A stretch of DNA of 12,830 nt from assembly GCF_000143415.4 (NCBI RefSeq), contig NW_003314561.1:1-12830 (forward strand), in the 5' to 3' direction. How positions within the stretch are numbered: position 1 is the first letter of the stretch; every line of letters starts with the position of its first letter. This DNA comes from Selaginella moellendorffii. Taxonomy: Eukaryota > Plantae > Lycopodiophyta. The position numbers were made by a program, and so were the translations under genes. Of the stretch, positions 1 to 12,830 are shown in pieces. The notes beneath the pieces are model-generated. The model made no database searches. It was not told where the DNA came from and saw nothing but the letters and a program-made list of their open reading frames with translations.

Positions 1-38
1 AACCCTAAAATGTGTTAAACCTAAATCCGCCCGTTACG

Positions 39-57
39 TGGTACCAATTTGGTACCA
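39..57. repeat. Perfect palindrome TGGTACCAA-T-TTGGTACCA in spacer haplotype A (units 1, 2, 3, 6, 7, 9)
   Basis: 9-bp arms around one base, read directly. Haplotype B units have TGGTTCCAA-T-TTGGTATCA. Confidence 0.85.
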
Positions 58-90
58 GAGAGACTAGTTGACTGTTTTAATTTTCCTTAG

Positions 91-96
91 TTTATT
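91..96 (-). terminator. Candidate polyadenylation signal AATAAA in an A-rich tract downstream of the ORF
   Basis: The plus strand reads TTTATT at 91-96 inside a T-rich tract. Present in most spacers; changed to a T-run in unit 8. Confidence 0.3.
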
Positions 97-261
97 TTCA
101 AACAGATGAACTGCGAGATGGGACTTCAACTCAAAACATGTTGGAAGATCCAGATTCCTTGCTGGCTACAAGTTGTTGTAAGCTAAATGAATGCTAATCC
201 GTAGGAAGAGTTTTTCTTCCTGGCTAACTAGAGAACCTAACTGAAACTCTGGATAACTAAT

Positions 262-1122
262 TTACCGATAGAGAGAGTTTGAAGAGCTTGAAAACCTGTA
301 ATGTGGTTTTGGAAATTCTTGGTTATTGGTAGGCTTGTAAAGGCTCTGGGTGAACCAGATAACCTTTAGTGTATGAGCTCCACAGATCTCATACACCCTC
401 TGCTCCGACCACGAGTCGGGAGCTGTGGCACTTGCTGCTATGCGCTTGGCAACGAGGCTTGACAGGAATGCCTTGGCGTTCTTTTCACCAAGGTGCCCCA
501 CACCAACTGGCTGCCACTGCTCAACGTCTGCGTTACTCTGGAACCACTGCCAAAAAAAGTCGTCGCAGGTGGACATAATCACAACCCCAGTCCAGTCTTG
601 CTTGGTCATGGCTGGGAAACATCCCAGGAGGGTGCCTACATCCTGGTCGGACCACCGCTTCAGCCTGTCAACTTCATCGATGACAAAAATTGGCCTCCTA
701 TGCTGGTTTTCAGCCGCTAGGCTCATAAACCAACTCATGACAGAGCCCAAGTCCTTCACTGGCTCCGCTTTTAACAGCTCTAGAAAGCTCGATGCATCAA
801 GGTTTACGCCCTTGAACGTCAGCTTCTTCATATTGACATTGACACCTCCGATCGTCTTCAAAAGGGCCGCTGCCACATCTTTGAGCCAAGAAGCCCAAGC
901 TCGCATCTGTCTTGCAATCTGTGCAGCAGCCAGCTCCGGGGAACTGAAGTCCGCAGCCCTCATGTCCATGTAGAAGAGCGGCAACTGGGCTTTCAGCAGA
1001 GGGTTGGCATCCCACATCTTCCTGAGCTGCTTGAGCAGAGCAGACTTGCCTGAATTGTTGGGGCCTATCACTACAGCGATGCAGTTGAAGCCTTCCTCAA
1101 TATGTGTGAGCAGATCAGTCAT
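262..1122 (-). CDS. P-loop NTPase (ATPase_2/STAND-like), copy 1, L-type, N-terminally truncated by frameshift (286 aa from internal ATG)
   Basis: Walker A GPNNSGKS, Walker B IFVIDEVD, downstream VVIMST strand, LGEKNAKAFL helix and VYEICGAH motif. The upstream ATG at 1229 is out of frame because of the +32 bp insertion; may be a pseudogene. Confidence 0.65.
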   Translation of the reverse strand: MTDLLTHIEEGFNCIAVVIGPNNSGKSALLKQLRKMWDANPLLKAQLPLFYMDMRAADFSSPELAAAQIARQMRAWASWLKDVAAALLKTIGGVNVNMKKLTFKGVNLDASSFLELLKAEPVKDLGSVMSWFMSLAAENQHRRPIFVIDEVDRLKRWSDQDVGTLLGCFPAMTKQDWTGVVIMSTCDDFFWQWFQSNADVEQWQPVGVGHLGEKNAKAFLSSLVAKRIAASATAPDSWSEQRVYEICGAHTLKVIWFTQSLYKPTNNQEFPKPHYRFSSSSNSLYR

Positions 1123-1156
1123 CTCTTCGTGCCTATCAAAGAAGAAATGACTGATC
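1113..1156. repeat. Inverted repeat: 16-bp stem (1 mismatch) with 12-nt loop, specific to L-type units
   Basis: GATCAGTCATCTCTTC (1113-1128) pairs with GAAGAAATGACTGATC (1141-1156). Also at 3555, 4792, 7234, 8471 and 10913. Confidence 0.9.
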
Positions 1157-1203
1157 GTCGTCGTTGAGCGACTTCTTCGTCATCATCATTGAGCGACTTC
1201 TTC
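1155..1203. repeat. ~25-bp direct duplication specific to L-type units
   Basis: TCGTCGTCGTTGAGCGACTTCTTC followed by G-TCATCATCATTGAGCGACTTCTTC; S-type units have only one copy. Confidence 0.92.
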
Positions 1204-1236
1204 AGCTCCCTCACCGCTTCAGCCGCCATAGCCGCC

Positions 1237-1246
1237 AAACCCTAAA
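1237..1246 (+). promoter_or_regulatory. Telo-box-like motif AAACCCTAAA just upstream of the gene ATG in each unit
   Basis: Exact AAACCCTAA, 8 nt from the ATG at 1229, with a degenerate AAACCTAAA nearby. Function is inferred; it could instead be a TTTTAG|G splice acceptor on the minus strand. Confidence 0.35.
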
Positions 1247-1498
1247 ATGTGTTAAACCTAAAGTCGCCCGTTACGTGGTACCAATTTGGTACCAGAGAGA
1301 CTAGTTGACTGTTTTAATTTTCTTTAGTTTATTTTCAAACAGATGAACTGCGAGATGGGACTTCAACTCAAAACATGTTGGAAGATCCAGATTCCTTGCT
1401 GGCTACAAGTTGTTGTAAGCTAAATGAATGCTAATCCGTAGGAAGAGTTTTTCTTCCTGGCTAACTAGAGAACCTAACTGAAACTCTAGAGAACTAAT

Positions 1499-2434
1499 TT
1501 ACCGATAGAGAGAGTTTGAAGAGCTTGAAAACCTGTAATGTGGTTTTGGAAATTCTTGGTTATTGGTAGGCTTGTAAAGGCTCTGGGTGAACCAAATAAC
1601 CTTTAGTGTATGAGCTCCATAGATCTCATACACCCTCTGCTCCGACCACGAGTCGGGAGCTGTGGCACTTGCTGCTATGCACTTGGCAACGAGGCTTGAC
1701 AGGAATGCCTTGGCGTTCTTTTCACCAAGGTGCCCCACACCAACTGGCTGCCACTTCTCAACGTCTGCGTGACTCTGGAACCACTGCCAAAAAAAGTCGT
1801 CGCAGGTGGACATAATCACAACCCCAGTCCAGTCTTGCTTGGTCATGGCTGGGAAACATCCTAGAAGGGTGCCTACATCCTGGTCGGACCACCGCTTTAG
1901 CCTGTCAGCTTCATCGATGACAAAAATTGGCCTCCTATGCTGGTTTTCAGCCGCTAGGCTCATAAACCAACTCATGACAGAGCCCAAGTCCTTCACTGGC
2001 TCCGCTTTTAACAGCTCTAGAAAGCTCGATGCATCAAGGTTTACGCCCTTGAACGTCAGCTTCTTCAGATTGACACAGACACCTCCGATCGTCTTTAGAA
2101 GGGCCGCTGCCACATCTTTGAGCCAAGAAGCCCAAGCTCGCATCTGTCTTGCAATCTGTGCAGCAGCCAGCTCCGCGGAACTGAAGTCCGCAGCCCTCAT
2201 GTCCATGTAGAAGAGCGGCAACTGGGCTTTCAGCAGAGGGTTGGCATCCCACATCTTCCTGAGCTGCTTGAGCAGAGCAGACTTGCCTGAATATTTGGGG
2301 CCTATCACTACAGCGATGCGGTTGAAGCCTTCCTCAATATGTGTGAGTAGATCAGTCATCTCTTCGTGCCTATCAATGAAACCCTCGTCGACGTTGAGCA
2401 ACTTCTTCAGCTCCCTCACCGCTTCAGCCGCCAT
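1499..2434 (-). CDS. P-loop NTPase (ATPase_2/STAND-like), copy 2, S-type full length (311 aa from ATG; ORF track extends to a TTG at 2443)
   Basis: FIDRHEE pre-Walker A motif, Walker A GPKYSGKS, Walker B IFVIDEAD, uninterrupted frame. Confidence 0.78.
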   Translation of the reverse strand: MAAEAVRELKKLLNVDEGFIDRHEEMTDLLTHIEEGFNRIAVVIGPKYSGKSALLKQLRKMWDANPLLKAQLPLFYMDMRAADFSSAELAAAQIARQMRAWASWLKDVAAALLKTIGGVCVNLKKLTFKGVNLDASSFLELLKAEPVKDLGSVMSWFMSLAAENQHRRPIFVIDEADRLKRWSDQDVGTLLGCFPAMTKQDWTGVVIMSTCDDFFWQWFQSHADVEKWQPVGVGHLGEKNAKAFLSSLVAKCIAASATAPDSWSEQRVYEIYGAHTLKVIWFTQSLYKPTNNQEFPKPHYRFSSSSNSLYR

Positions 2435-2703
2435 AGCCGCCAAACCCTAAAATGTGTTAAACCTAAAGTCGCCCGTTACGTGGTACCAATTTGGTACCAG
2501 AGAGACTAGTTGACTGTTTTAATTTTCCTTAGTTTATTTTCAAACAGATGAACTGCGAGATGGGACGTCAACTCAAAACATGTTGGAAGATCCAGATTCC
2601 TTGCTGGCTACAAGTTGTTGTAAGCTAAATGAATGCTAATCCGTAGGAAGAGTTTTTCTTCCTGGCTAACTAGAGAACCTAACTGAAACTCTGGAGAACT
2701 AAT

Positions 2704-3564
2704 TTACCGATAGAGAGAGTTTGAAGAGCTTGAAAACCTGTAATGTGGGTTTGGAAATTCTTGGTTATTGGTAGGCTCGTAAAGGCTCTGGGTGAACCAG
2801 ATAACCTTTAGTGTATGAGCTCCACAGATCTCATACACCCTCTGCTCCGACCACGAGTCGGGAGCTGTGGCACTTGCTGCTATGCGCTTGGCAACGAGGC
2901 TTGACAGGAATGCCTTGGCGTTCTTTTCACCAAGGTGCCCCACACCAACTGGCTGCCACTGCTCAACGTCTGCGTTACTCTGGAACCACTGCCAAAAATA
3001 GTCGTCGCAGGTGGACATAATCACAACCCCAGTCCAGTCTTGCTTGGTCATGGCTGGGAAACATCCCAGGAGGGTGCCTACATCCTGGTCGGACCACCGC
3101 TTCAGCCTGTCAACTTCATCGATGACAAAAATTGGCCTCCTATGCTGGTTTTCAGCCGCTAGGCTCATAAACCAACTCATGACAGAGCCCAAGTCCTTCA
3201 CTGGCTCCGCTTTTAACAGCTCTAGAAAGCTCGATGCATCAAGGTTTACGCCCTTGAACGTCAGCTTCTTCAGATTGACATTGACACCTCCAATCGTCTT
3301 CAGAAGGGCCGCTGCCACATCTTTGAGCCAAGAAGCCCAAGCTCGCATCTGTCTTGCAATCTGTGCAGCAGCCAGCTCCGGGGAACTGAAGTCCGCAGCC
3401 CTCATGTCCATGTAGAAGAGCGGCAACTGGGCTTTCAGCAGAGGGTTGGCATCCCACATCTTCCTGAGCTGCTTGAGCAGAGCAGACTTGCCTGAATTGT
3501 TGGGGCCTATCACTACAGCGATGCAGTTGAAGCTTTCCTCAATATGTGTGAGCAGATCAGTCAT
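2704..3564 (-). CDS. P-loop NTPase, copy 3, L-type (286 aa, frameshifted N-terminus)
   Basis: Walker A GPNNSGKS and Walker B IFVIDEVD; +32 bp insertion upstream of MTDLL. Confidence 0.65.
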   Translation of the reverse strand: MTDLLTHIEESFNCIAVVIGPNNSGKSALLKQLRKMWDANPLLKAQLPLFYMDMRAADFSSPELAAAQIARQMRAWASWLKDVAAALLKTIGGVNVNLKKLTFKGVNLDASSFLELLKAEPVKDLGSVMSWFMSLAAENQHRRPIFVIDEVDRLKRWSDQDVGTLLGCFPAMTKQDWTGVVIMSTCDDYFWQWFQSNADVEQWQPVGVGHLGEKNAKAFLSSLVAKRIAASATAPDSWSEQRVYEICGAHTLKVIWFTQSLYEPTNNQEFPNPHYRFSSSSNSLYR

Positions 3565-3940
3565 CTCTTCGTGCCTATCAAAGAAGAAATGACTGATCGT
3601 CGTCGTTGAGCGACTTCTTCGTCATCATCATTGAGCGACTTCTTCAGCTCCCTCACCGCTTCAGCCACCATAGCCGCCAAACCCTAAAATGTGTTAAACC
3701 TAAAGTCGCCCGTTACGTGGTTCCAATTTGGTATCAGAGAGACTAGTTGACTTTTTTTATTTTTTTTAGTTTATTTTCAAACAGATGAGCTGTGAAATGG
3801 GACATCAACTCAAAACATGTTGGAAGATCCAGATTCCTTGCTGGCTACAAGTTGTTGTAAGCTAAACAAATGCTAATCTGTAGGAAGAGTTTTTCTTCCT
3901 GGCTAACTAGAGAACCTGACTGAAACTCTGGATAACTAAT

Positions 3941-4801
3941 TTACCGATAGAGAGAGTTTGAAGAGCTTGAAAACCTGTAATGTGGGTTTGGAAATTCTTG
4001 GTTATTGGTAGGCTCGTAAAGGCTCTGGGTGAACCAGATAACCTTTAGTGTATGAGCTCCACAGATCTCATACACCCTCTGCTCCGACCACGAGTCGGGA
4101 GCTGTGGCACTTGCTGCTATGCGCTTGGCAACGAGGCTTGACAGGAATGCCTTGGCGTTCTTTTCACCAAGGTGCCCCACACCAACTGGCTGCCACTGCT
4201 CAACGTCTGCGTTACTCTGGAACCACTGCCAAAAATAGTCGTCGCAGGTGGACATAATCACAACCCCAGTCCAGTCTTGCTTGGTCATGGCTGGGAAACA
4301 TCCCAGGAGGGTGCCTACATCCTGGTCGGACCACCGCTTCAGCCTGTCAACTTCATCGATGACAAAAATTGGCCTCCTATGCTGGTTTTCAGCCGCTAAG
4401 CTCATAAACCAACTCATGACAGAGCCCAAGTCCTTCACTGGCTCCGCTTTTAACAGCTCTAGAAAGCTCGATGCATCAAGGTTTACGCCCTTGAACGTCA
4501 GCTTCTTCAGATTGACATTGACACCTCCAATCGTCTTCAGAAGGGCCGCTGCCACATCTTTGAGCCAAGAAGCCCAAGCTCGCATCTGTCTTGCAATCTG
4601 TGCAGCAGCCAGCTCCGGGGAACTGAAGTCCGCAGCCCTCATGTCCATGTAGAAGAGCGGCAACTGGGCTTTCAGCAGAGGGTTGGCATCCCACATCTTC
4701 CTGAGCTGCTTGAGCAGAGCAGACTTGCCTGAATTGTTGGGGCCTATCACTACAGCGATGCAGTTGAAGCCTTCCTCAATATGTGTGAGCAGATCAGTCA
4801 T
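3941..4801 (-). CDS. P-loop NTPase, copy 4, L-type (286 aa, frameshifted N-terminus)
   Basis: Same motifs; differs from the copy 3 protein by one residue (EEG vs EES). Confidence 0.65.
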   Translation of the reverse strand: MTDLLTHIEEGFNCIAVVIGPNNSGKSALLKQLRKMWDANPLLKAQLPLFYMDMRAADFSSPELAAAQIARQMRAWASWLKDVAAALLKTIGGVNVNLKKLTFKGVNLDASSFLELLKAEPVKDLGSVMSWFMSLAAENQHRRPIFVIDEVDRLKRWSDQDVGTLLGCFPAMTKQDWTGVVIMSTCDDYFWQWFQSNADVEQWQPVGVGHLGEKNAKAFLSSLVAKRIAASATAPDSWSEQRVYEICGAHTLKVIWFTQSLYEPTNNQEFPNPHYRFSSSSNSLYR

Positions 4802-5177
4802 CTCTTCGTGCCTATCAAAGAAGAAATGACTGATCGTCGTCGTTGAGCGACTTCTTCGTCATCATCATTGAGCGACTTCTTCAGCTCCCTCACCGCTTCA
4901 GCCGCCATAGCCGCCAAACCCTAAAATGTGTTAAACCTAAAGTCGCCCGTTACGTGGTTCCAATTTGGTATCAGAGAGACTAGTTGACTTTTTTTATTTT
5001 TTTTAGTTTATTTTCAAACAGATGAGCTGTGAAATGGGACGTCAACTCAAAACATGTTGGAAGATCCAGATTCCTTGCTGGCTACAAGTTGTTGTAAGCT
5101 AAACAAATGCTAATCTGTAGGAAGAGTTTTTCTTCCTGGCTAACTAGAGAACCTGACTGAAACTCTGGATAACTAAT

Positions 5178-6113
5178 TTACCGATAGAGAGAGTTTGAAG
5201 AGCTTGAAAACCTGTAATGTGGGTTTGGAAATTCTTGGTTATTGGTAGGCTCGTAAAGGCTCTGGGTGAACCAGATAACCTTTAGTGTATGAGCTCCATA
5301 GATCTCATACACCCTCTGCTCCGACCACGAGTCGGGAGCTGTGGCACTTGCTGCTATGCGCTTGGCAACGAGGCTTGACAGGAATGCCTTGGCGTTCTTT
5401 TCACCAAGGTGCCCCACACCAACTGGCTGCCACTGCTCAACGTCTGCGTTACTCTGGAACCACTGCCAAAAATAGTCGTCGCAGGTGGACATAATCACAA
5501 CCCCAGTCCAGTCTTGCTTGGTCATGGCTGGGAAACATCCCAGGAGGGTGCCTACATCCTGGTCGGACCACCGCTTCAGCCTGTCAACTTCATCGATGAC
5601 AAAAATTGGCCTCCTATGCTGGTTTTCAGCCGCTAGGCTCATAAACCAACTCATGACAGAGCCCAAGTCCTTCACTGGCTCCGCTTTTAACAGCTCTAGA
5701 AAGCTCGATGCATCAAGGTTTACGCCCTTGAACGTCAGCTTCTTCAGATTGACACAGACACCTCCGATCGTCTTTAGAAGGGCCGCTGCCACATCTTTGA
5801 GCCAAGAAGCCCAAGCTCGCATCTGTCTTGCAATCTGTGCAGCAGCCAGCTCCGCGGAACTGAAGTCCGCAGCCCTCATGTCCATGTAGAAGAGCGGCAA
5901 CTGGGCTTTCAGCAGAGGGTTGGCATCCCACATCTTCCTGAGCTGCTTGAGCAGAGCAGACTTGCCTGAATATTTGGGGCCTATCACTACAGCGATGCGG
6001 TTGAAGCCTTCCTCAATATGTGTGAGTAGATCAGTCATCTCTTCGTGCCTATCAATGAAACCCTCGTCGTCGTTGAGCAACTTCTTCAGCTCCCTCACCG
6101 CTTCAGCCGCCAT
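5178..6113 (-). CDS. P-loop NTPase, copy 5, S-type full length (311 aa from ATG)
   Basis: FIDRHEE, Walker A GPKYSGKS, Walker B IFVIDEVD; uninterrupted frame. Confidence 0.78.
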   Translation of the reverse strand: MAAEAVRELKKLLNDDEGFIDRHEEMTDLLTHIEEGFNRIAVVIGPKYSGKSALLKQLRKMWDANPLLKAQLPLFYMDMRAADFSSAELAAAQIARQMRAWASWLKDVAAALLKTIGGVCVNLKKLTFKGVNLDASSFLELLKAEPVKDLGSVMSWFMSLAAENQHRRPIFVIDEVDRLKRWSDQDVGTLLGCFPAMTKQDWTGVVIMSTCDDYFWQWFQSNADVEQWQPVGVGHLGEKNAKAFLSSLVAKRIAASATAPDSWSEQRVYEIYGAHTLKVIWFTQSLYEPTNNQEFPNPHYRFSSSSNSLYR

Positions 6114-6382
6114 AGCCGCCAAACCCTAAAATGTGTTAAACCTAAAGTCGCCCGTTACGTGGTACCAATTTGGTACCAGAGAGACTAGTTGACTGTTTTA
6201 ATTTTCCTTAGTTTATTTTCAAACAGATGAACTGCGAGATGGGACTTCAACTCAAAACATGTTGGAAGATCCAGATTCCTTGCTGGCTACAAGTTGTTGT
6301 AAGCTAAATGAATGCTAATCCGTAGGAAGAGTTTTTCTTCCTGGCTAACTAGAGAACCTAACTGAAACTCTAGAGAACTAAT

Positions 6383-7243
6383 TTACCGATAGAGAGAGTT
6401 TGAAGGGCTTGAAAACCTGTAATGTGGGTTTGGAAATTCTTGGTTATTGGTAGGCTCGTAAAGGCTCTGGGTGAACCAGATAACCTTTAGTGTATGAGCT
6501 CCATAGATCTCATACACCCTCTGCTCCGACCACGAGTCGGGAGCTGTGGCACTTGCTGCTATGCGCTTGGCAACGAGGCTTGACAGGAATGCCTTGGCGT
6601 TCTTTTCACCAAGGTGCCCCACACCAACTGGCTGCCACTGCTCAACGTCTGTGTTACTCTGGAACCACTGCCAAAAATAGTCGTCGCAGGTGGACATAAT
6701 CACAACCCCAGTCCAGTCTTGCTTGGTCATGGCTGGGAAACATCCCAGGAGGGTGCCTACATCCTGGTCGGACCACCGCTTCAGCCTGTCAACTTCATCG
6801 ATGACAAAAATTGGCCTCCTATGCTGGTTTTCAGCCGCTAGGCTCATAAACCAACTCATGACAGAGCCCAAGTCCTTCACTGGCTCCGCTTTTAACAGCT
6901 CTAGAAAGCTCGATGCATCAAGGTTTACGCCCTTGAACGTCAGCTTCTTCAGATTGACACTGACACCTCCGATCGTCTTCAGAAGGGCCGCTGCCACATC
7001 TTTGAGCCAAGAAGCCCAAGCTCGCATCTGTCTTGCAATCTGTGCAGCAGCCAGCTCCGGGGAACTGAAGTCCGCAGCCCTCATGTCCATGTAGAAGAGC
7101 GGCAACTGGGCTTTCAGCAGAGGGTTGGCATCCCACATCTTCCTGAGCTGCTTGAGCAGAGCAGACTTGCCTGAATTGTTGGGGCCTATCACTACAGCGA
7201 TGCGGTTGAAGCTTTCCTCAATATGTGTGAGCAGATCAGTCAT
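6383..7243 (-). CDS. P-loop NTPase, copy 6, L-type (286 aa, frameshifted N-terminus)
   Basis: Walker A and B intact; +32 bp insertion upstream. Confidence 0.65.
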   Translation of the reverse strand: MTDLLTHIEESFNRIAVVIGPNNSGKSALLKQLRKMWDANPLLKAQLPLFYMDMRAADFSSPELAAAQIARQMRAWASWLKDVAAALLKTIGGVSVNLKKLTFKGVNLDASSFLELLKAEPVKDLGSVMSWFMSLAAENQHRRPIFVIDEVDRLKRWSDQDVGTLLGCFPAMTKQDWTGVVIMSTCDDYFWQWFQSNTDVEQWQPVGVGHLGEKNAKAFLSSLVAKRIAASATAPDSWSEQRVYEIYGAHTLKVIWFTQSLYEPTNNQEFPNPHYRFSSPSNSLYR

Positions 7244-7619
7244 CTCTTCGTGCCTATCAAAGAAGAAATGACTGATCGTCGTCGTTGAGCGACTTCTTCG
7301 TCATCATCATTGAGCGACTTCTTCAGCTCCCTCACCGCTTCAGCCGCCATAGCCGCCAAACCCTAAAATGTGTTAAACCTAAAGTCGCCCGTTACGTGGT
7401 ACCAATTTGGTACCAGAGAGACTAGTTGACTGTTTTAATTTTCCTTAGTTTATTTTCAAACAGATGAACTGCGAGATGGGACGTCAACTCAAAACATGTT
7501 GGAAGATCCAGATTCCTTGCTGGCTACAAGTTGTTGTAAGCTAAATGAATGCTAATCCGTAGGAAGAGTTTTTCTTCCTGGCTAACTAGAGAACCTAACT
7601 GAAACTCTGGAGAACTAAT

Positions 7620-8480
7620 TTACCGATAGAGAGAGTTTGAAGAGCTTGAAAACCTGTAATGTGGTTTTGGAAATTCTTGGTTATTGGTAGGCTTGTAAAG
7701 GCTCTGGGTGAACCAGATAACCTTTAGTGTATGAGCTCCATAGATCTCATACACCCTCTGCTCCGACCACGAGTCGGGAGCTGTGGCACTTGCTGCTATG
7801 CACTTGGCAACGAGGCTTGACAGGAATGCCTTGGCGTTCTTTTCACCAAGGTGCCCCACACCAACTGGCTGCCACTGCTCAACGTCTGCGTGACTCTGGA
7901 ACCACTGCCAAAAAAAGTCGTCGCAGGTGGACATAATCACAACCCCAGTCCAGTCTTGCTTGGTCATGGCTGGGAAACATCCTAGGAGGGTGCCTACATC
8001 CTGGTCGGACCACCGCTTCAGCCTGTCAGCTTCATCGATGACAAAAATTGGCCTCCTATGCTGGTTTTCAGCCGCTAGGCTCATAAACCAACTCATGACA
8101 GAGCCCAAGTCCTTCACTGGCTCCGCTTTTAACAGCTCTAGAACGCTCGATGCATCAAGGTTTACGCCCTTGAACGTCAGCTTCTTCAGATTGACACAGA
8201 CACCTCCGATCGTCTTTAGAAGGGCCGCTGCCACATCTTTGAGCCAAGAAGCCCAAGCTCGCATCTGTCTTGCAATCTGTGCAGCAGCCAGCTCCGCGGA
8301 ACTGAAGTCCGCAGCCCTCATGTCCATGTAGAAGAGCGGCAACTGGGCTTTCAGCAGAGGGTTGGCATCCCACATCTTCCTGAGCTGCTTGAGCAGAGCA
8401 GACTTGCCTGAATTGTTGGGGCCTATCACTACAGCGATGCAGTTGAAGCCTTCCTCAATATGTGTGAGCAGATCAGTCAT
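7620..8480 (-). CDS. P-loop NTPase, copy 7, L-type (286 aa, frameshifted N-terminus)
   Basis: Walker A GPNNSGKS, Walker B IFVIDEAD; +32 bp insertion upstream. Confidence 0.65.
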   Translation of the reverse strand: MTDLLTHIEEGFNCIAVVIGPNNSGKSALLKQLRKMWDANPLLKAQLPLFYMDMRAADFSSAELAAAQIARQMRAWASWLKDVAAALLKTIGGVCVNLKKLTFKGVNLDASSVLELLKAEPVKDLGSVMSWFMSLAAENQHRRPIFVIDEADRLKRWSDQDVGTLLGCFPAMTKQDWTGVVIMSTCDDFFWQWFQSHADVEQWQPVGVGHLGEKNAKAFLSSLVAKCIAASATAPDSWSEQRVYEIYGAHTLKVIWFTQSLYKPTNNQEFPKPHYRFSSSSNSLYR

Positions 8481-8856
8481 CTCTTCGTGCCTATCAAAGA
8501 AGAAATGACTGATCGTCGTCGTTGAGCGACTTCTTCGTCATCATCATTGAGCGACTTCTTCAGCTCCCTCACCGCTTCAGCCACCATAGCCGCCAAACCC
8601 TAAAATGTGTTAAACCTAAAGTCGCCCGTTACGTGGTTCCAATTTGGTATCAGAGAGACTAGTTGACTTTTTTTATTTTTTTTAGTTTTTTTTCAAACAG
8701 ATGAGCTGTGAAATGGGACATCAACTCAAAACATGTTGGAAGATCTAGATTCCTTGCTGGCTACAAGTTGTTGTAAGCTAAACAAATGCTAATCTGTAGG
8801 AAGAGTTTTTCTTCCTGGCTAACTAGAGAACCTGACTGAAACTCTGGAGAACTAAT

Positions 8857-9792
8857 TTACCGATAGAGAGAGTTTGAAGAGCTTGAAAACCTGTAATGTG
8901 GGTTTGGAAATTCTTGGTTATTGGTAGGCTCGTAAAGGCTCTGGGTGAACCAGATAACCTTTAGTGTATGAGCTCCACAGATCTCATACACCCTCTGCTC
9001 CGACCACGAGTCGGGAGCTGTGGCACTTGCTGCTATGCGCTTGGCGACGAGGCTTGACAGGAATGCCTTGGCGTTCTTTTCACCAAGGTGCCCCACACCA
9101 ACTGGCTTCCACTGCTCAACGTCTACGTGACTCTGGAACCACTGCCAAAAAAAGTCGTCGCAGGTGGACATAATCACAACCCCAGTCCGGTCCTGCTTGG
9201 TGATGGCTATGAAACATCCCAGGAGGGTGCCTACATCCTGGTCGGACCACCGCTTCAGCCTGTCAGCTTCATCGATGACAAAAATTGGCCTCCTATGCTG
9301 GTTTTCAGCCTCCAGGCTCATAAACCAACTCATGACAAAGCCCAAGTCCTTCACTGGCTCCGCTTTTAACAGCTCTAGAAAGCTCGATGCATCAAGGTTT
9401 ACGCCCTTGAATGTCAGCTTCTTGAGATCGACACTGACACCTCCGATCGTCTTCAGAAGGGCCACTGCCACATCTTTGAGCCAAGAAGCCCAAGCTCGCA
9501 TCTGTCTTGCAATCTATGCAGCAGCCAGCTCCAGAGAACTGAAGTCCGCAGGCCTCATGTCCATGTAGAAGAGCGGCAACTGGGCTTTCAGCAGAGGGTT
9601 GGCATCCCACATCTTCCTGAGCTGCTTGAGCAGAGCAAACTTGCCTGAATTGTTGGGGCCTATCACTACAGCGATGTGGTTGAAGCCTTCCTCAATATGT
9701 GTGAGCAGATCAGTCATCTCTTCGTGCCTATCAATGAAACCCTCGTCGTCGTTGAGCGACTTCTTCAGCTCCCTCACCGCTTCAGCCGCCAT
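8857..9792 (-). pseudogene. P-loop NTPase pseudogene, copy 8 (S-type)
   Basis: An in-frame CAG>TAG nonsense change at 9514-9516 splits the ORF into the 95-aa and 214-aa pieces of the track. Walker A is also mutated, GKS>GKF. Confidence 0.88.
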
Positions 9793-10061
9793 AGCCGCCA
9801 AACCCTAAAATGTGTTAAACCTAAAGTCGCCCGTTACGTGGTACCAATTTGGTACCAGAGAGACTAGTTGACTGTTTTAATTTTCCTTAGTTTATTTTCA
9901 AACAGATGAACTGCGAGATGGGACGTCAACTCAAAACATGTTGGAAGATCCAGATTCCTTGCTGGCTACAAGTTGTTGTAAGCTAAATGAATGCTAATCC
10001 GTAGGAAGAGTTTTTCTTCCTGGCTAACTAGAGAACCTAACTGAAACTCTGGAGAACTAAT

Positions 10062-10922
10062 TTACCGATAGAGAGAGTTTGAAGAGCTTGAAAACCTGTA
10101 ATGTGGTTTTGGAAATTCTTGGTTATTGGTAGGCTTGTAAAGGCTCTGGGTGAACCAGATAACCTTTAGTGTATGAGCTCCATAGATCTCATACACCCTC
10201 TGCTCCGACCACGAGTCGGGAGCTGTGGCACTTGCTGCTATGCGCTTGGCAACGAGGCTTGACAGGAATGCCTTGGCGTTCTTTTCACCAAGGTGCCCCA
10301 CACCAACTAGCTGCCACTGCTCAACGTCTGCGTGACTCTGGAACCACTGCCAAAAAAAGTCGTCGCAGGTGGACATAATCACAACCCCAGTCCAGTCTTG
10401 CTTGGTCATGGCTGGGAAACATCCCAGGAGGGTGCCTACATCCTGGTCGGACCACCGCTTCAGCCTGTCAGCTTCATCGATGACAAAAATTGGCCTCCTA
10501 TGCTGGTTTTCAGCCGCTAGGCTCATAAACCAACTCATGACAGAGCCCAAGTCCTTCACTGGCTCCGCTTTTAACAGCTCTAGAAAGCTCGATGCATCAA
10601 GGTTTACGCCCTTGAACGTCAGCTTCTTCAGATTGACACTGACACCTCCGATCGTCTTCAGAAGGGCCGCTGCCACATCTTTGAGCCAAGAAGCCCAAGC
10701 TCGCATCTGTCTTGCAATCTGTGCAGCAGCCAGCTCCGGGGAACTGAAGTCCGCAGCCCTCATGTCCATGTAGAAGAGCGGCAACTGGGCTTTCAGCAGA
10801 GGGTTGGCATCCCACATCTTCCTGAGCTGCTTGAGCAGAGCAGACTTGCCTGAATTGTTGGGGCCTATCACTACAGCGATGCAGTTGAAGCCTTCCTCAA
10901 TATGTGTGAGCAGATCAGTCAT
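10062..10922 (-). CDS. P-loop NTPase, copy 9, L-type (286 aa, frameshifted N-terminus)
   Basis: Walker A GPNNSGKS, Walker B IFVIDEAD; +32 bp insertion upstream. Confidence 0.65.
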   Translation of the reverse strand: MTDLLTHIEEGFNCIAVVIGPNNSGKSALLKQLRKMWDANPLLKAQLPLFYMDMRAADFSSPELAAAQIARQMRAWASWLKDVAAALLKTIGGVSVNLKKLTFKGVNLDASSFLELLKAEPVKDLGSVMSWFMSLAAENQHRRPIFVIDEADRLKRWSDQDVGTLLGCFPAMTKQDWTGVVIMSTCDDFFWQWFQSHADVEQWQLVGVGHLGEKNAKAFLSSLVAKRIAASATAPDSWSEQRVYEIYGAHTLKVIWFTQSLYKPTNNQEFPKPHYRFSSSSNSLYR

Positions 10923-11298
10923 CTCTTCGTGCCTATCAAAGAAGAAATGACTGATCGTCGTCGTTGAGCGACTTCTTCGTCATCATCATTGAGCGACTTC
11001 TTCAGCTCCCTCACCGCTTCAGCCACCATAGCCGCCAAACCCTAAAATGTGTTAAACCTAAAGTCGCCCGTTACGTGGTTCCAATTTGGTATCAGAGAGA
11101 CTAGTTGACTGTTTTAATTTTCTTTAGTTTATTTTCAAACAGATGAGCTGTGAAATGGGACATCAACTCAAAACATGTTGGAAGATCCAGATTCCTTGCT
11201 GGCTACAAGTTGTTGTAAGATAAACAAATGCTAATCTGTAGGAAGAGTTTTTCTTCCTGGCTAACTAGAGAACCTGACTGAAACTCTGGAGAACTAAT

Positions 11299-12234
11299 TT
11301 ACCGATAGAGAGAGTTTGAAGAGCTTGAAAACCTGTAATGTGGGTTTGGAAATTCTTGGTTATTGGTAGGCTCATAAAGGCTCTGGGTGAACCAGATAAC
11401 CTTTAGTGTATGAGCTCCACAGATCTCATACACCCTCTGCTCCGACCACGAGTCGGGAGCTGTGGCACTTGCTGCTATGCGCTTGGCGACGAGGCTTGAC
11501 AGGAATGCCTTGGCGTTCTTTTCACCAAGGTGCCCCACACCAACTGGCTTCCACTGCTCAACGTCTGTGTGACTCTGGAACCACTGCCAAAAAAAGTCGT
11601 CGCAGGTAGACATAATCACAACCCCAGTCCGGTCCTGCTTGGTGATGGCTATGAAACATCCCAGAAGGGTGCCTACATCCTGGTCGGACCACCGCTTTAG
11701 CCTATCAGCTTCATCGATGACAAAAATTGGCCTCCTATGCTGGTTTTCAGCCTCCAGGCTCATAAACCAACTCATGACAAAGCCCAAGTCCTTCACTAGC
11801 TCCGCTTTTAACAGCTCTAGAAAGCTCGATGCATCAAGGTTTTCGCCCTTGAATGTCAGCTTCTTGAGATCGACACTGACACCTCCGATCGTCTTCAGAA
11901 GGGCCGCTGCCACATCTTTGAGCCAAGAAGCCCAAGCTCGCATCTGTCTTGCAATCTGTGCAGCAGCCAGCTCCGGAGAACTGAAGTCCGCAGCCCTCAT
12001 GTCCATGTAGAAGAGCGGCAACTGGGCTTTCAGCAGAGGGTTGGCATCCCACATCTTCCTGAGCTGCTTGAGCAGAGCAGACTTGCCTGAATTGTTGGGG
12101 CCTATCACTACAGCGATGCGGTTGAAGCCTTCCTCAATATGTGTGAGCAGATCAGTCATCTCTTCGTGCCTATCAATGAAACCCTCGTCGTCGTTGAGCG
12201 ACTTCTTCAGCTCCCTCACCGCTTCAGCCGCCAT
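11299..12234 (-). CDS. P-loop NTPase, copy 10, S-type full length (311 aa from ATG), divergent haplotype shared with copy 8
   Basis: FIDRHEE, Walker A GPNNSGKS, Walker B IFVIDEAD, variant block CFIAITKQDRT; uninterrupted frame. Confidence 0.78.
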   Translation of the reverse strand: MAAEAVRELKKSLNDDEGFIDRHEEMTDLLTHIEEGFNRIAVVIGPNNSGKSALLKQLRKMWDANPLLKAQLPLFYMDMRAADFSSPELAAAQIARQMRAWASWLKDVAAALLKTIGGVSVDLKKLTFKGENLDASSFLELLKAELVKDLGFVMSWFMSLEAENQHRRPIFVIDEADRLKRWSDQDVGTLLGCFIAITKQDRTGVVIMSTCDDFFWQWFQSHTDVEQWKPVGVGHLGEKNAKAFLSSLVAKRIAASATAPDSWSEQRVYEICGAHTLKVIWFTQSLYEPTNNQEFPNPHYRFSSSSNSLYR

Positions 12235-12503
12235 AGCCGCCAAACCCTAAAATGTGTTAAACCTAAAGTCGCCCGTTACGTGGTTCCAATTTGGTATCAG
12301 AGAGACTAGTTGACTGTTTTAATTTTCTTTAGTTTATTTTCAAACAGATGAGCTATGAAATGGGACATCAACTCAAAACATGTTGGAAGATCCAGATTCC
12401 TTGCTGGCTACAAGTTGTTGTAAGCTAAACAAATGCTAATCTGTAGGAAGAGTTTTTCTTCCTGGCTAACTAGAGAACCTGACTGAAACTCTGGATAACT
12501 AAT

Positions 12504-12830
12504 TTACCGATAGAGAGAGTTTGAAGAGCTTGAAAACCTGTAATGTGGGTTTGGAAATTCTTGGTTATTGGTAGGCTCGTAAAGGCTCTGGGTGAACCAG
12601 ATAACCTTTAGTGTATGAGCTCCACAGATCTCATACACCCTCTGCTCCGACCACGAGTCGGGAGCTGTGGCACTTGCTGCTATGCGCTTGGCAACGAGGC
12701 TTGACAGGAATGCCTTGGCGTTCTTTTCACCAAGGTGCCCCACACCAACTGGCTGCGACTGCTCAACGTCTGCGTTACTCTGGAACCACTGCCAAAAATA
12801 GTCGTCGCAGGTGGACATAATCACAACCCC
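12504..12830 (-). CDS. P-loop NTPase, copy 11, 3' portion only (truncated by window edge)
   Basis: C-terminal ~108 codons nearly identical to copies 3 and 4; frame open to the window end. Confidence 0.7.
   Translation of the reverse strand, partial: GVVIMSTCDDYFWQWFQSNADVEQSQPVGVGHLGEKNAKAFLSSLVAKRIAASATAPDSWSEQRVYEICGAHTLKVIWFTQSLYEPTNNQEFPNPHYRFSSSSNSLYR

What the first reader, a model, noticed from the sequence alone, without database searches (positions are those of the whole stretch)
1..12830. Macrosatellite made of a minimal STAND-like NTPase gene (at least 11 tandem copies)
Seen: nothing but a ~1.2 kb unit, ~75% of it an ORF with FIDRHEE, Walker A, Walker B and a VYEICGAH motif. Established: STAND-class NTPases have an hhGRExE motif before Walker A and a C-terminal GxP motif, and the archaeal ATPase (ATPase_2) family begins with F-x-D-R-E-x-E. 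STAND/NLR genes commonly form fast-evolving clusters involved in immunity or cell death. Inference: this is a recently amplified array of NTPases with no visible sensor or effector domain. It could be an immune-type or dosage gene cluster, a selfish gene-carrying satellite, or a silenced reservoir of variants.
Basis: partly seen in the sequence, partly recalled or inferred. Interest (0 to 1): 0.8.

Follow-up and report, generated by a model that had tools for sequence, protein, structure and literature searches.

The report
Silent satellite built from a truncated ATPase gene
This spikemoss contig is a real tandem array of a 1.2 kb unit copied from the front three-quarters of an archaeal-type ATPase gene, but the copies are cut short, mostly disabled and not transcribed in the RNA sampled, so it looks like gene-derived satellite DNA and not a working immune gene cluster.

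Summary
The window is 10 complete units plus one partial unit of 1205 or 1237 bp, 94-99% identical, with the ORF on the minus strand. The ORF passes Pfam ATPase_2 (45-48 bits against a cutoff of 33.2), and its model matches the archaeal ATPase_2 structures 2QEN and 2FNA best.

It is not a complete "minimal" NTPase. Relatives are 416-507 aa and continue through a CGGxP motif, lid helices and a winged helix. The array ORF leaves the family inside that motif (..YEICG|AH..), at the only strong hairpin in the unit, which looks like a fold-back rearrangement junction.

- Six of 10 units carry a 32-bp frameshifting insertion.
- One unit has a nonsense codon and a broken Walker A.
- Only three units keep the 311-aa ORF.
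- Variation among copies fits neutrality.
- Two RNA-seq runs (about 9.2 million reads sampled from each) gave no read at 99% identity or more. The seven reads laid are mostly 88-95% alike, and the partly fitting ones run on past the break like the GGCPL paralogue contigs.

Best reading (0.68): a young, silent macrosatellite born from a gene fragment. The scan noted the same kind of array on another piece of this genome (s1-408534). Copy number, array ends and small RNAs were not tested.

The parts
1..12830 (-). Tandem array: 10 complete units and one partial unit of a 1205/1237-bp repeat, with the gene fragment on the minus strand
1..1237 (-). Unit 1, A-type (1237 bp, 32-bp frameshifting insertion). 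The longest ORF is 286 aa from an internal Met (262-1122).
1238..2442 (-). Unit 2, B-type (1205 bp). Intact 311-aa ORF from the ATG at 2434 to the stop at 1499.
2443..3679 (-). Unit 3, A-type, frameshifted at the N-terminus
3680..4916 (-). Unit 4, A-type, frameshifted at the N-terminus. It combines an A-type 5' end with a type-2 non-coding tail, so it is a recombinant unit.
4917..6121 (-). Unit 5, B-type. Intact 311-aa ORF at 5178-6113. This unit was used for all protein searches, the structure model and read laying.
6122..7358 (-). Unit 6, A-type. The duplicated or inserted stretch lies within 7259-7324.
7359..8595 (-). Unit 7, A-type, frameshifted
8596..9800 (-). Unit 8, B-type but dead. It has CAG>TAG at codon 93 (9514-9516) and Walker A GKS>GKF.
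9801..11037 (-). Unit 9, A-type, frameshifted
11038..12242 (-). Unit 10, B-type. Intact 311-aa ORF (11299-12234).
12243..12830 (-). Unit 11, partial (the 3' 588 bp of a unit); runs off the window
5285..5312 (-). Breakpoint hairpin GTGTATGAGATC-TATG-GAGCTCATACAC, present in all 11 units. Homology to the paralogue contigs and to the protein family ends at 5296, where the second arm begins.
4917..5284 (-). 368-nt tail of the unit of unknown origin. It comprises 35 further sense codons, a stop at 5178-5180 and non-coding sequence with AATAAA at 5007-5012. It has no similarity to the C-termini of relatives and no RNA coverage.
6121..6129 (-). Plant telo-box TTAGGGTTT, 8 nt upstream of the ATG. It occurs once per unit boundary (10 matches against 0.06 expected).
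5958..5981 (-). Walker A (P-loop) coding stretch of unit 5
5583..5600 (-). Walker B (VIDEVD) coding stretch of unit 5

Best explanation
This is a young macrosatellite whose unit was copied from part of a plant ATPase_2-family (archaeal-type AAA+, ORC/STAND-like) gene. The unit holds a short 5' leader with a telo-box and the first ~273 codons: the N-terminal FxDRxxE motif, Walker A, Walker B and most of the nucleotide-binding core. A rearrangement that left a 12-nt fold-back at the junction cut the gene inside its CGGxP motif and joined it to 368 nt of unrelated sequence. That sequence happens to stay open for 37 more codons.

The unit then multiplied head to tail. It has since evolved by unequal crossing-over or gene conversion, giving mosaic units, and by neutral decay. 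A derived subfamily has a frameshifting 32-bp insertion (6 of 10 units), and one unit has a nonsense codon plus a dead P-loop.

Shown: the repeat, the family, the truncation point, the disabling changes, the lack of matching RNA reads and a transcribed paralogue.
Inferred: the fold-back mechanism, neutrality (counts are small), heterochromatic silencing and high copy number.
For: - **Array and subfamilies:**
- **Family:** ATPase_2 scores 45-48 bits against a cutoff of 33.2. The AF2 model has pLDDT 82, and its best PDB matches are 2QEN and 2FNA, then ORC/Cdc6.
- **Truncation:** All 49 relatives found among 1.84 billion representatives are 33% identical or less, and the better-scoring, near-full-length ones are longer (416-507 aa). 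The family consensus is Y..CGG....L, with CGGSPVLL, TGGSPRLL and CGGNPGAM in relatives. BLASTP alignments end at ..VYEIYGA. The full-length relative P0001 folds into further lid helices and a winged helix and matches 2QEN over its whole length. tblastn finds nothing of those C-termini in the unit's tail.
- **Paralogue:** Contigs X15 and X16 are ~92% identical over 5296-5943 and then run on unlike the unit. They read ..YGGCPLTLENC, so they keep GGxP. Some RNA reads lie only partly on the unit, and their coverage also begins in the bin that holds 5296.
- **Junction:** The only 12-nt hairpin in the unit sits exactly there. The chance of one anywhere in a unit is 0.027.
- **Decay:** Observed changes are 18 synonymous, 36 non-synonymous and 1 stop, against 15.2 synonymous and 2.2 stops expected under transition-weighted neutrality (p=0.24). 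Variable sites are 6.3% in coding and 9.3% in non-coding sequence (p=0.08).
- **Silence:** Of ~9.2 million reads sampled from each of two RNA-seq runs, 4 and 3 were laid and none was 99% alike or more. There was no coverage of 4950-5293 or 6154-6220.
- **Ancestral unit type:** The organism B contig spans the indel site without a gap, so the 1205-bp type is ancestral.
- **Other copies:** A second piece of the genome carries the same kind of array.
Against: - Three units keep a full 311-aa ORF with intact Walker motifs, and coding sites vary slightly less than non-coding ones, so weak constraint is not excluded.
- Only two RNA-seq runs of one study were read, at 12% each. Tissue-specific, stress-induced or small-RNA expression was not examined.
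- Only 30 nt of the paralogue beyond the break could be seen. A short residual match (ACACTnnAG, T-L) means the junction could lie up to ~18 nt further on.
- The genomic locus of the progenitor was not available, so the origin of the 368-nt tail is unknown.
- Copy number and chromosomal position are untested.
Confidence: 0.68

Rival explanations
1. This is a working tandem gene cluster. The intact units make a short, stand-alone P-loop NTPase (NBD only) used for dosage or as an immune-type decoy or adaptor.
For: - Three intact 311-aa ORFs carry FIDRHEE, Walker A and Walker B.
- The fold model is confident up to about residue 290.
- A telo-box, an ATG and AATAAA are arranged like a compact plant gene.
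- Coding sites vary slightly less than non-coding ones.
Against: - No array-type RNA reads were found.
- The ORF is cut inside the conserved CGGxP motif and lacks the lid end and winged helix present in a full-length relative.
- Seven of 10 units are disabled.
- The substitution pattern fits neutrality.
- No such protein has been predicted among 15 billion public proteins.
Confidence: 0.1
2. This is a Stellate/Su(Ste)-like or siRNA-source array. The gene-derived repeat is kept because it makes small RNAs that regulate the dispersed ATPase_2 paralogues, or because it acts as a selfish, normally silenced element.
For: - The unit is ~92% identical to a transcribed paralogue over ~650 nt, enough for trans-acting siRNAs.
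- The array is silent in mRNA libraries.
- By my own knowledge, Drosophila Stellate is a 1.15-1.25 kb tandem unit derived from a CK2-beta gene.
Against: No small-RNA or methylation data were available. CpG observed/expected of 0.59 and a C>T-rich spectrum are unspecific. Nothing shows selection on the array.
Confidence: 0.09
3. The unit is an internal tandem repeat of a larger mobile element, such as a Helitron or a Pack-type transposon, that captured a gene fragment. The array would then belong to that element and would not be a free-standing satellite.
For: - The gene fragment is joined to foreign sequence at a rearrangement junction.
- The array is present on at least two pieces of the genome.
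Against: The whole 12.8-kb window holds nothing but the unit. There are no terminal inverted repeats, transposase or other TE-like ORFs in it. The flanks are not in the window.
Confidence: 0.08
4. This is an assembly artefact: one or two real copies were inflated into an array.
For: The window may be a small unplaced contig made only of repeat. Copy number was not checked with read depth.
Against: - Units differ at 7-55 sites in structured, shared patterns.
- There are two length classes and four recombinant combinations.
- Many runs hold the unit.
- A second contig carries the same kind of array.
Confidence: 0.03

Closest known systems
Pfam ATPase_2 (PF01637) archaeal-type AAA+ ATPases, with solved structures 2QEN (Pyrococcus abyssi PABY2304) and 2FNA (Sulfolobus SSO1545)
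   Same: The profile score is above the cutoff. The N-terminal FxDRxxE motif, Walker A and Walker B are present. These structures are the best structural matches.
   Different: The array ORF stops being homologous inside the CGGxP motif and lacks the rest of the lid and the winged-helix domain. It is at most 33% identical to any known protein, and most copies are disabled.
Plant and algal ATPase_2-like proteins: Adiantum nelumboides MCO5597131.1, Selaginella moellendorffii EFJ12306.1, EFJ21861.1 and EFJ37611.1, Chlorokybus, Myrmecia bisecta KAK9819982.1
   Same: They are the nearest sequence relatives, with a shared consensus FFNR..EL, GP..SGKT, IIDEAN, TKQ, SD.FF..WL.
   Different: These are dispersed genes, the better-scoring ones 416-507 aa, with a complete C-terminus. 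None is reported as a tandem array. Identity is only 25-33%.
STAND NTPases (NB-ARC, NACHT, MalT; Leipe et al. 2004, from my own knowledge)
   Same: The full-length relative P0001 matches NRC4, CED-4, ZAR1 and MalT with TM ~0.5 behind ORC/Cdc6. A conserved acidic motif precedes Walker A.
   Different: The array ORF has no GxP motif, winged helix, sensor or effector. No STAND structure is among its top 50 matches. NACHT and nSTAND profiles score below their cutoffs.
ORF-bearing macrosatellites and amplified truncated genes: human D4Z4/DUX4, mouse Sp100-rs, Drosophila Stellate/Su(Ste) (from my own knowledge)
   Same: A unit of a kilobase or more is derived from a protein-coding gene, repeated head to tail, homogenised, largely silent, and a mix of intact and broken ORFs.
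   Different: The source gene is a P-loop NTPase fragment and the host is a lycophyte. No function, copy-number polymorphism or small-RNA link has been shown here.

Membership tests
Pfam ATPase_2 (PF01637) | Profile score at or above the curated gathering cutoff | tested here: met
   The 314-aa ORFs score 45.4-48.2 bits against a cutoff of 33.2. The 286-aa A-type ORF scores 35.0 bits, which is marginal.
Pfam ATPase_2 (PF01637) | N-terminal F-x-[DN]-R-x-x-E motif ahead of the P-loop, in frame with a start codon | tested here: inconclusive
   Met in the four 1205-bp units (GFIDRHEE). Not met in the six 1237-bp units, where a 32-bp insertion separates it from the ATG.
Pfam ATPase_2 (PF01637) | Walker A GxxxxGK[ST] and Walker B hhhhDE | tested here: met
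   GPNNSGKS or GPKYSGKS and FVIDE[V/A]D are present in all units, except that unit 8 has GKF.
Pfam ATPase_2 (PF01637) | Fold of the solved family members | tested here: met
   The top Foldseek matches are 2QEN (E 2e-07) and 2FNA (E 4.5e-07).
Pfam ATPase_2 (PF01637) | Complete domain through the C-terminal GGxP motif, followed by lid helices and a winged helix | tested here: not met
   The Pfam alignment covers profile positions 1-168 to 1-193 of 225. The array reads CG|AH where relatives read CGGxP. P0001 has helices at 277-313 and a winged helix at 325-415 that the array lacks.
STAND NTPases | NBD-HD-WHD module with a GxP motif | tested here: not met
   The ORF is truncated inside GGxP and has no winged helix.
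STAND NTPases | Fused sensor (repeat) or effector domains | tested here: not met
   No other Pfam domain is found. The unit has no room for one.
STAND NTPases | Profile or structural match to NACHT, NB-ARC or nSTAND | tested here: not met
   NACHT scores 18.6-21.1 bits against 26.7, nSTAND1 13-17.8 against 27.1, and nSTAND_NTPase5 12.7-14.2 against 34. No STAND chain is among the top 50 structural matches of the array ORF. Only the full-length relative reaches them.
Macrosatellite / gene-derived satellite DNA | Head-to-tail repeat of a unit of 1 kb or more with high identity between units | tested here: met
   10.5 units of 1205/1237 bp at 94-99% identity.
Macrosatellite / gene-derived satellite DNA | Homogenisation by unequal exchange or conversion (mosaic units) | tested here: met
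   All four combinations of 5' type (A or B) and tail type (1 or 2) occur.
Macrosatellite / gene-derived satellite DNA | High or variable copy number; block-like chromosomal location | not testable with these tools
   Only hints are available: a second contig, and many small runs that each hold 57-71% of the unit's words.
Macrosatellite / gene-derived satellite DNA | Transcriptional silence | tested here: inconclusive
   No read at 99% identity or more in 2 x 9.2 million RNA reads. This covers one study, sampled at 12%, with no small-RNA data.

The most novel reading that the evidence does not exclude
The array is kept because it works. In this reading it is a normally silenced, gene-derived repeat whose small RNAs tune the dispersed ATPase_2 paralogues (~92% identical), or whose three intact units release a lid-less, winged-helix-less NTPase that poisons or decoys the oligomers of the full-length proteins under particular conditions. 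That would be a plant counterpart of Stellate/Su(Ste)-type systems.
Probability: 0.08. Interest if true: 0.65.

Novelty: new member of a known kind. Interest (0 to 1): 0.3.

Why it matters
This satellite has a source gene family, a truncation point and a junction signature that can still be read. It could therefore serve as a small case study of how a kilobase-unit satellite is born from a host gene and then decays and homogenises. It also shows that a long ORF with textbook Walker motifs in every unit is not evidence of a gene cluster. For the biology of plant ATPase_2/STAND-like proteins it adds little unless expression or small RNAs are found.

Tried and rejected
- **TRF:** Found nothing because its period limit is 500, so the repeat finder was used instead.
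- **Word-index protein search and exact look-up of the 286-aa ORF:** No result. The exhaustive search was then justified.
- **PDB by sequence:** Only chance hits.
- **NCBIfam:** Nothing above the cutoffs.
- **Is the 32-bp insertion an intron?** Rejected. It is a 25-nt direct duplication plus 7 nt, has no GT..AG of the right phase, and DNA units without it exist.
- **Is the break at 5296 an exon-intron boundary?** Rejected. There is no GT there, a fold-back sits at the junction, and earlier notes describe this genome's single-copy relatives as intronless. The last point is a lead that I did not check.
- **Antisense 123-182-aa ORFs on the plus strand:** No Pfam match in the two ORFs scanned (134 and 182 aa).
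- **Rfam on two units:** Nothing.
- **blastn of the unit against the loci of P0001 and P0003:** Nothing.
- **tblastn of all relatives against the unit's tail:** Nothing significant.
- **Three paper searches (Selaginella satellites, PF01637 in plants, Selaginella centromeres):** Nothing relevant.
- **Findings search by sequence:** Blank.

Full report
**1. The observation**

The repeat finder shows one repeat family filling the window. Units start at 1, 1238, 2443, 3680, 4917, 6122, 7359, 8596, 9801, 11038 and 12243, with spacings of 1237 or 1205 bp and 94-99% identity. TRF reported nothing only because its longest period is 500. Every unit carries a long ORF on the minus strand, of 286, 314 or (in one unit) 214 aa. 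GC content is 47-51% throughout.

A MAFFT alignment of the 11 units in gene orientation shows a single length difference. This is a 32-bp stretch near the 5' end of the ORF, made of a 25-nt direct duplication of GAAGAAGTCGCTCAAyGAyGAyGA plus 7 further bases. The count is 10 complete units plus a 588-bp partial one.

**2. State of the copies**

The four 1205-bp units ('B-type': units 2, 5, 8, 10) read from an ATG as MAAEAVRELKK..GFIDRHEEM.. and give a 311-aa ORF.

The six 1237-bp units ('A-type') are frameshifted by the insertion. The upstream ATG frame ends in a TGA that overlaps the internal Met, and the main frame has a TGA 14 codons upstream of DRHEE. This leaves only a 286-aa ORF that lacks the N-terminal helix and motif.

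Unit 8 also has CAG>TAG at codon 93 (window 9514-9516) and a Walker A Ser>Phe change. Three of 10 units are therefore intact.

A contig from organism B spans the indel site without a gap, so the 1205-bp form is ancestral and the A-type is a derived, disabled subfamily.

The units are mosaics. All four combinations of 5' type (A or B) and tail type (1 or 2) occur, and the middle parts group differently again. This is the signature of unequal exchange or gene conversion within an array, and it argues against an assembly artefact.

**3. Selection**

Among the copies the main frame shows 18 synonymous, 36 non-synonymous and 1 nonsense change, giving pN/pS of ~0.58 with equal weights. With the observed transition bias (59 transitions to 28 transversions), neutrality predicts 15.2 synonymous changes and 2.2 stops. 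The excess of synonymous changes is not significant (p=0.24).

Coding sites vary at 6.3% and non-coding sites at 9.3% (p=0.08). The data fit neutral or nearly neutral decay. Weak constraint cannot be excluded with so few changes.

**4. The protein family**

The 314-aa ORFs match Pfam ATPase_2 (PF01637) at 45.4-48.2 bits against a cutoff of 33.2, covering profile positions 1 to 168-193 of 225. AAA_16, NACHT and the nSTAND profiles fall below their cutoffs, and AAA_22 only grazes its own (26.2-28.0 bits against 27).

The word-index search of 5.8 billion clusters found nothing. The exhaustive HMMER search of 1.84 billion representatives found only 49 proteins at E of 0.001 or better, the best at 33% identity (P0001, 416 aa, from a Logan contig of SRR6920663). 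Named relatives are hypothetical proteins of the fern Adiantum nelumboides, Selaginella moellendorffii, Chlorokybus, the green alga Myrmecia bisecta and a Chlamydiales MAG. All those scanned carry ATPase_2, and some also RNA12.

An AF2 model built on 34 sequences has pLDDT 82 and pTM 0.80. Its best PDB matches are the two solved ATPase_2 proteins, 2QEN and 2FNA, followed by ORC/Cdc6. No STAND protein is in the top 50.

**5. It is a fragment, not a minimal NTPase**

The better-scoring relatives that cover most of the query are 416-507 aa. The family consensus runs ..W...Y..CGG....L and goes on for ~140-190 residues. Individual relatives read CGGSPVLL, TGGSPRLL, CGGNPGAM and CGGNMFLL. BLASTP alignments of the array ORF end at ..VYEIYGA, opposite VYDICGG and LYRVTGG.

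The model of full-length P0001 (pLDDT 87) has further lid helices (277-313) and a helix-strand-helix-helix-strand-strand winged helix (325-415) after that motif. It matches 2QEN over its whole length. Behind ORC/Cdc6 it also matches NRC4, CED-4, ZAR1 and MalT.

The array ORF has none of this. Its last 37 codons have pLDDT that falls to 33, and tblastn of all relatives finds nothing significant in the 368-nt tail.

**6. A paralogue fixes the breakpoint**

Four runs were laid on window 4950-6220. A contig of organism A (X15; guessed to be RNA) is ~92% identical over 5296-5943 and then continues for 178 nt unlike the unit. A contig of organism B (X16) does the same for 255 nt or more, with almost the same letters. 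Some raw RNA reads lie only partly on the unit, and their coverage begins in the bin that holds 5296. Read in frame, the paralogue continues ..EIYGG CPLTLENC, so it keeps GGxP, whereas the array reads ..EIYG AHTLKVIW.

The only hairpin in the unit with 12-nt arms, one mismatch and a short loop is GTGTATGAGATC-TATG-GAGCTCATACAC, and its second arm begins at 5296. Such a hairpin occurs anywhere in 2.7% of random 1205-nt sequences, and it is present in all 11 units. I read this as a fold-back or template-switch junction. That is an inference.

A short residual match (ACACTnnAG) means the true end of homology could lie up to ~18 nt further on.

The X15 copy is itself decayed relative to unit 5. 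It has 25 non-synonymous against 10 synonymous codon changes among the 40 listed differences (28 more rows were not shown), a stop at codon 175 and a 6-nt deletion.

**7. Expression**

About 9.2 million reads (12% of the run) were sampled from each of two RNA-seq runs of the same species. Only 4 and 3 reads were laid, and none was 99% alike or more (counts by identity class 99+/95-99/90-95/under 90: 0/0/2/2 and 0/1/2/0). No read or contig from any run covered the unit's tail (4950-5293) or the region upstream (6154-6220).

The array is silent in these samples, while a paralogue is transcribed at a low level. Small RNAs, other tissues and methylation were not examined. CpG observed/expected is 0.59, and half of all changes are C>T or G>A. 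This is compatible with methylated DNA but not specific to it.

**8. Other features**

- A plant telo-box (TTAGGGTTT) lies 8 nt upstream of each ATG, with 10 matches against 0.06 expected.
- An AATAAA lies ~170 nt after the stop.

Both would fit a compact plant gene. They would equally fit a stretch of 5' leader carried along with the fragment.

- The plus-strand ORFs scanned have no family match.
- Rfam finds nothing.

**9. Context from the scan (leads, not evidence)**

- The genome is a spikemoss.
- Another piece carries a 'macrosatellite built from a bare STAND/archaeal-ATPase-like NTPase module' (s1-408534).
- Four notes describe intronless single-copy archaeal-type ATPase genes of 1233-1359 nt in the same genome. 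This fits an intronless progenitor of ~420-450 aa.

I could not read those sequences.

**10. Verdict**

The window is a real, young tandem array derived from a truncated ATPase_2-family gene. It is mostly disabled and evolving close to neutrally, and no array transcript appeared in the RNA sampled. That is gene-fragment satellite DNA (confidence 0.68). The rivals are:

| Rival reading | Confidence |
|---|---|
| Working mini-NTPase cluster | 0.10 |
| Small-RNA or Stellate-like system | 0.09 |
| Part of a transposon | 0.08 |
| Assembly artefact | 0.03 |

It is a new member of a known kind, namely ORF-bearing macrosatellites or amplified truncated genes, and it is of modest interest.

Noticed in passing
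window 6121-6129 and the same place at each unit boundary (10 sites): A perfect plant telo-box (TTAGGGTTT, the reverse complement of AAACCCTAA) sits 8 nt upstream of the ATG in every unit, with 10 matches against 0.06 expected. It could be a carried-over promoter or 5'-UTR element of the progenitor, or a hint of a subtelomeric origin.
   Followed up: partly
window 40-56, 1277-1293, 2482-2498, 6161-6177, 7398-7414, 9840-9856: A near-palindrome GGTACCAAATTGGTACC (two KpnI sites) occurs in the non-coding tail of the six 'type 1' units only. The 'type 2' tails have lost it through two substitutions.
   Followed up: no
window 5612 and 5862 (differences seen in laid contigs): The paralogue contigs differ from the unit by in-frame indels only: +GAG at 5612 in organism B and -6 nt at 5862 in organism A. 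This suggests the dispersed copies were under coding constraint for some time, although the organism A copy now has a stop at codon 175.
   Followed up: partly
runs X1-X14 and X31: At least 15 very small runs of one sample (3-4 million letters of contigs each) each hold 57-71% of the unit's sampled 31-mers. If these are low-coverage runs, only high-copy DNA would assemble, which hints at a large copy number.
   Followed up: no
P0002, P0010, P0012: Several plant and algal relatives also pass the Pfam RNA12 (PF10443; yeast YME2/RNA12) cutoff over the same P-loop region. This links the green-lineage ATPase_2-like proteins with the YME2-type AAA+ domain.
   Followed up: no
L002:3001-5533 (S. moellendorffii GL377640.1): The gene for relative P0003 (457 aa) spans 2533 nt, so it has introns. 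Its annotated product matches ATPase_2 only weakly and starts after the N-terminal motif, so the gene model may be incomplete.
   Followed up: no
runs X16-X18, X25, X30 (organisms B, C, D): Runs labelled as three other organisms hold 5-10% of the gene's words. In organism B the contigs are 88-99% alike and break at the same place as the paralogue. The dispersed gene is therefore shared beyond the window's species label, while the unit's tail was not seen in organism B.
   Followed up: partly
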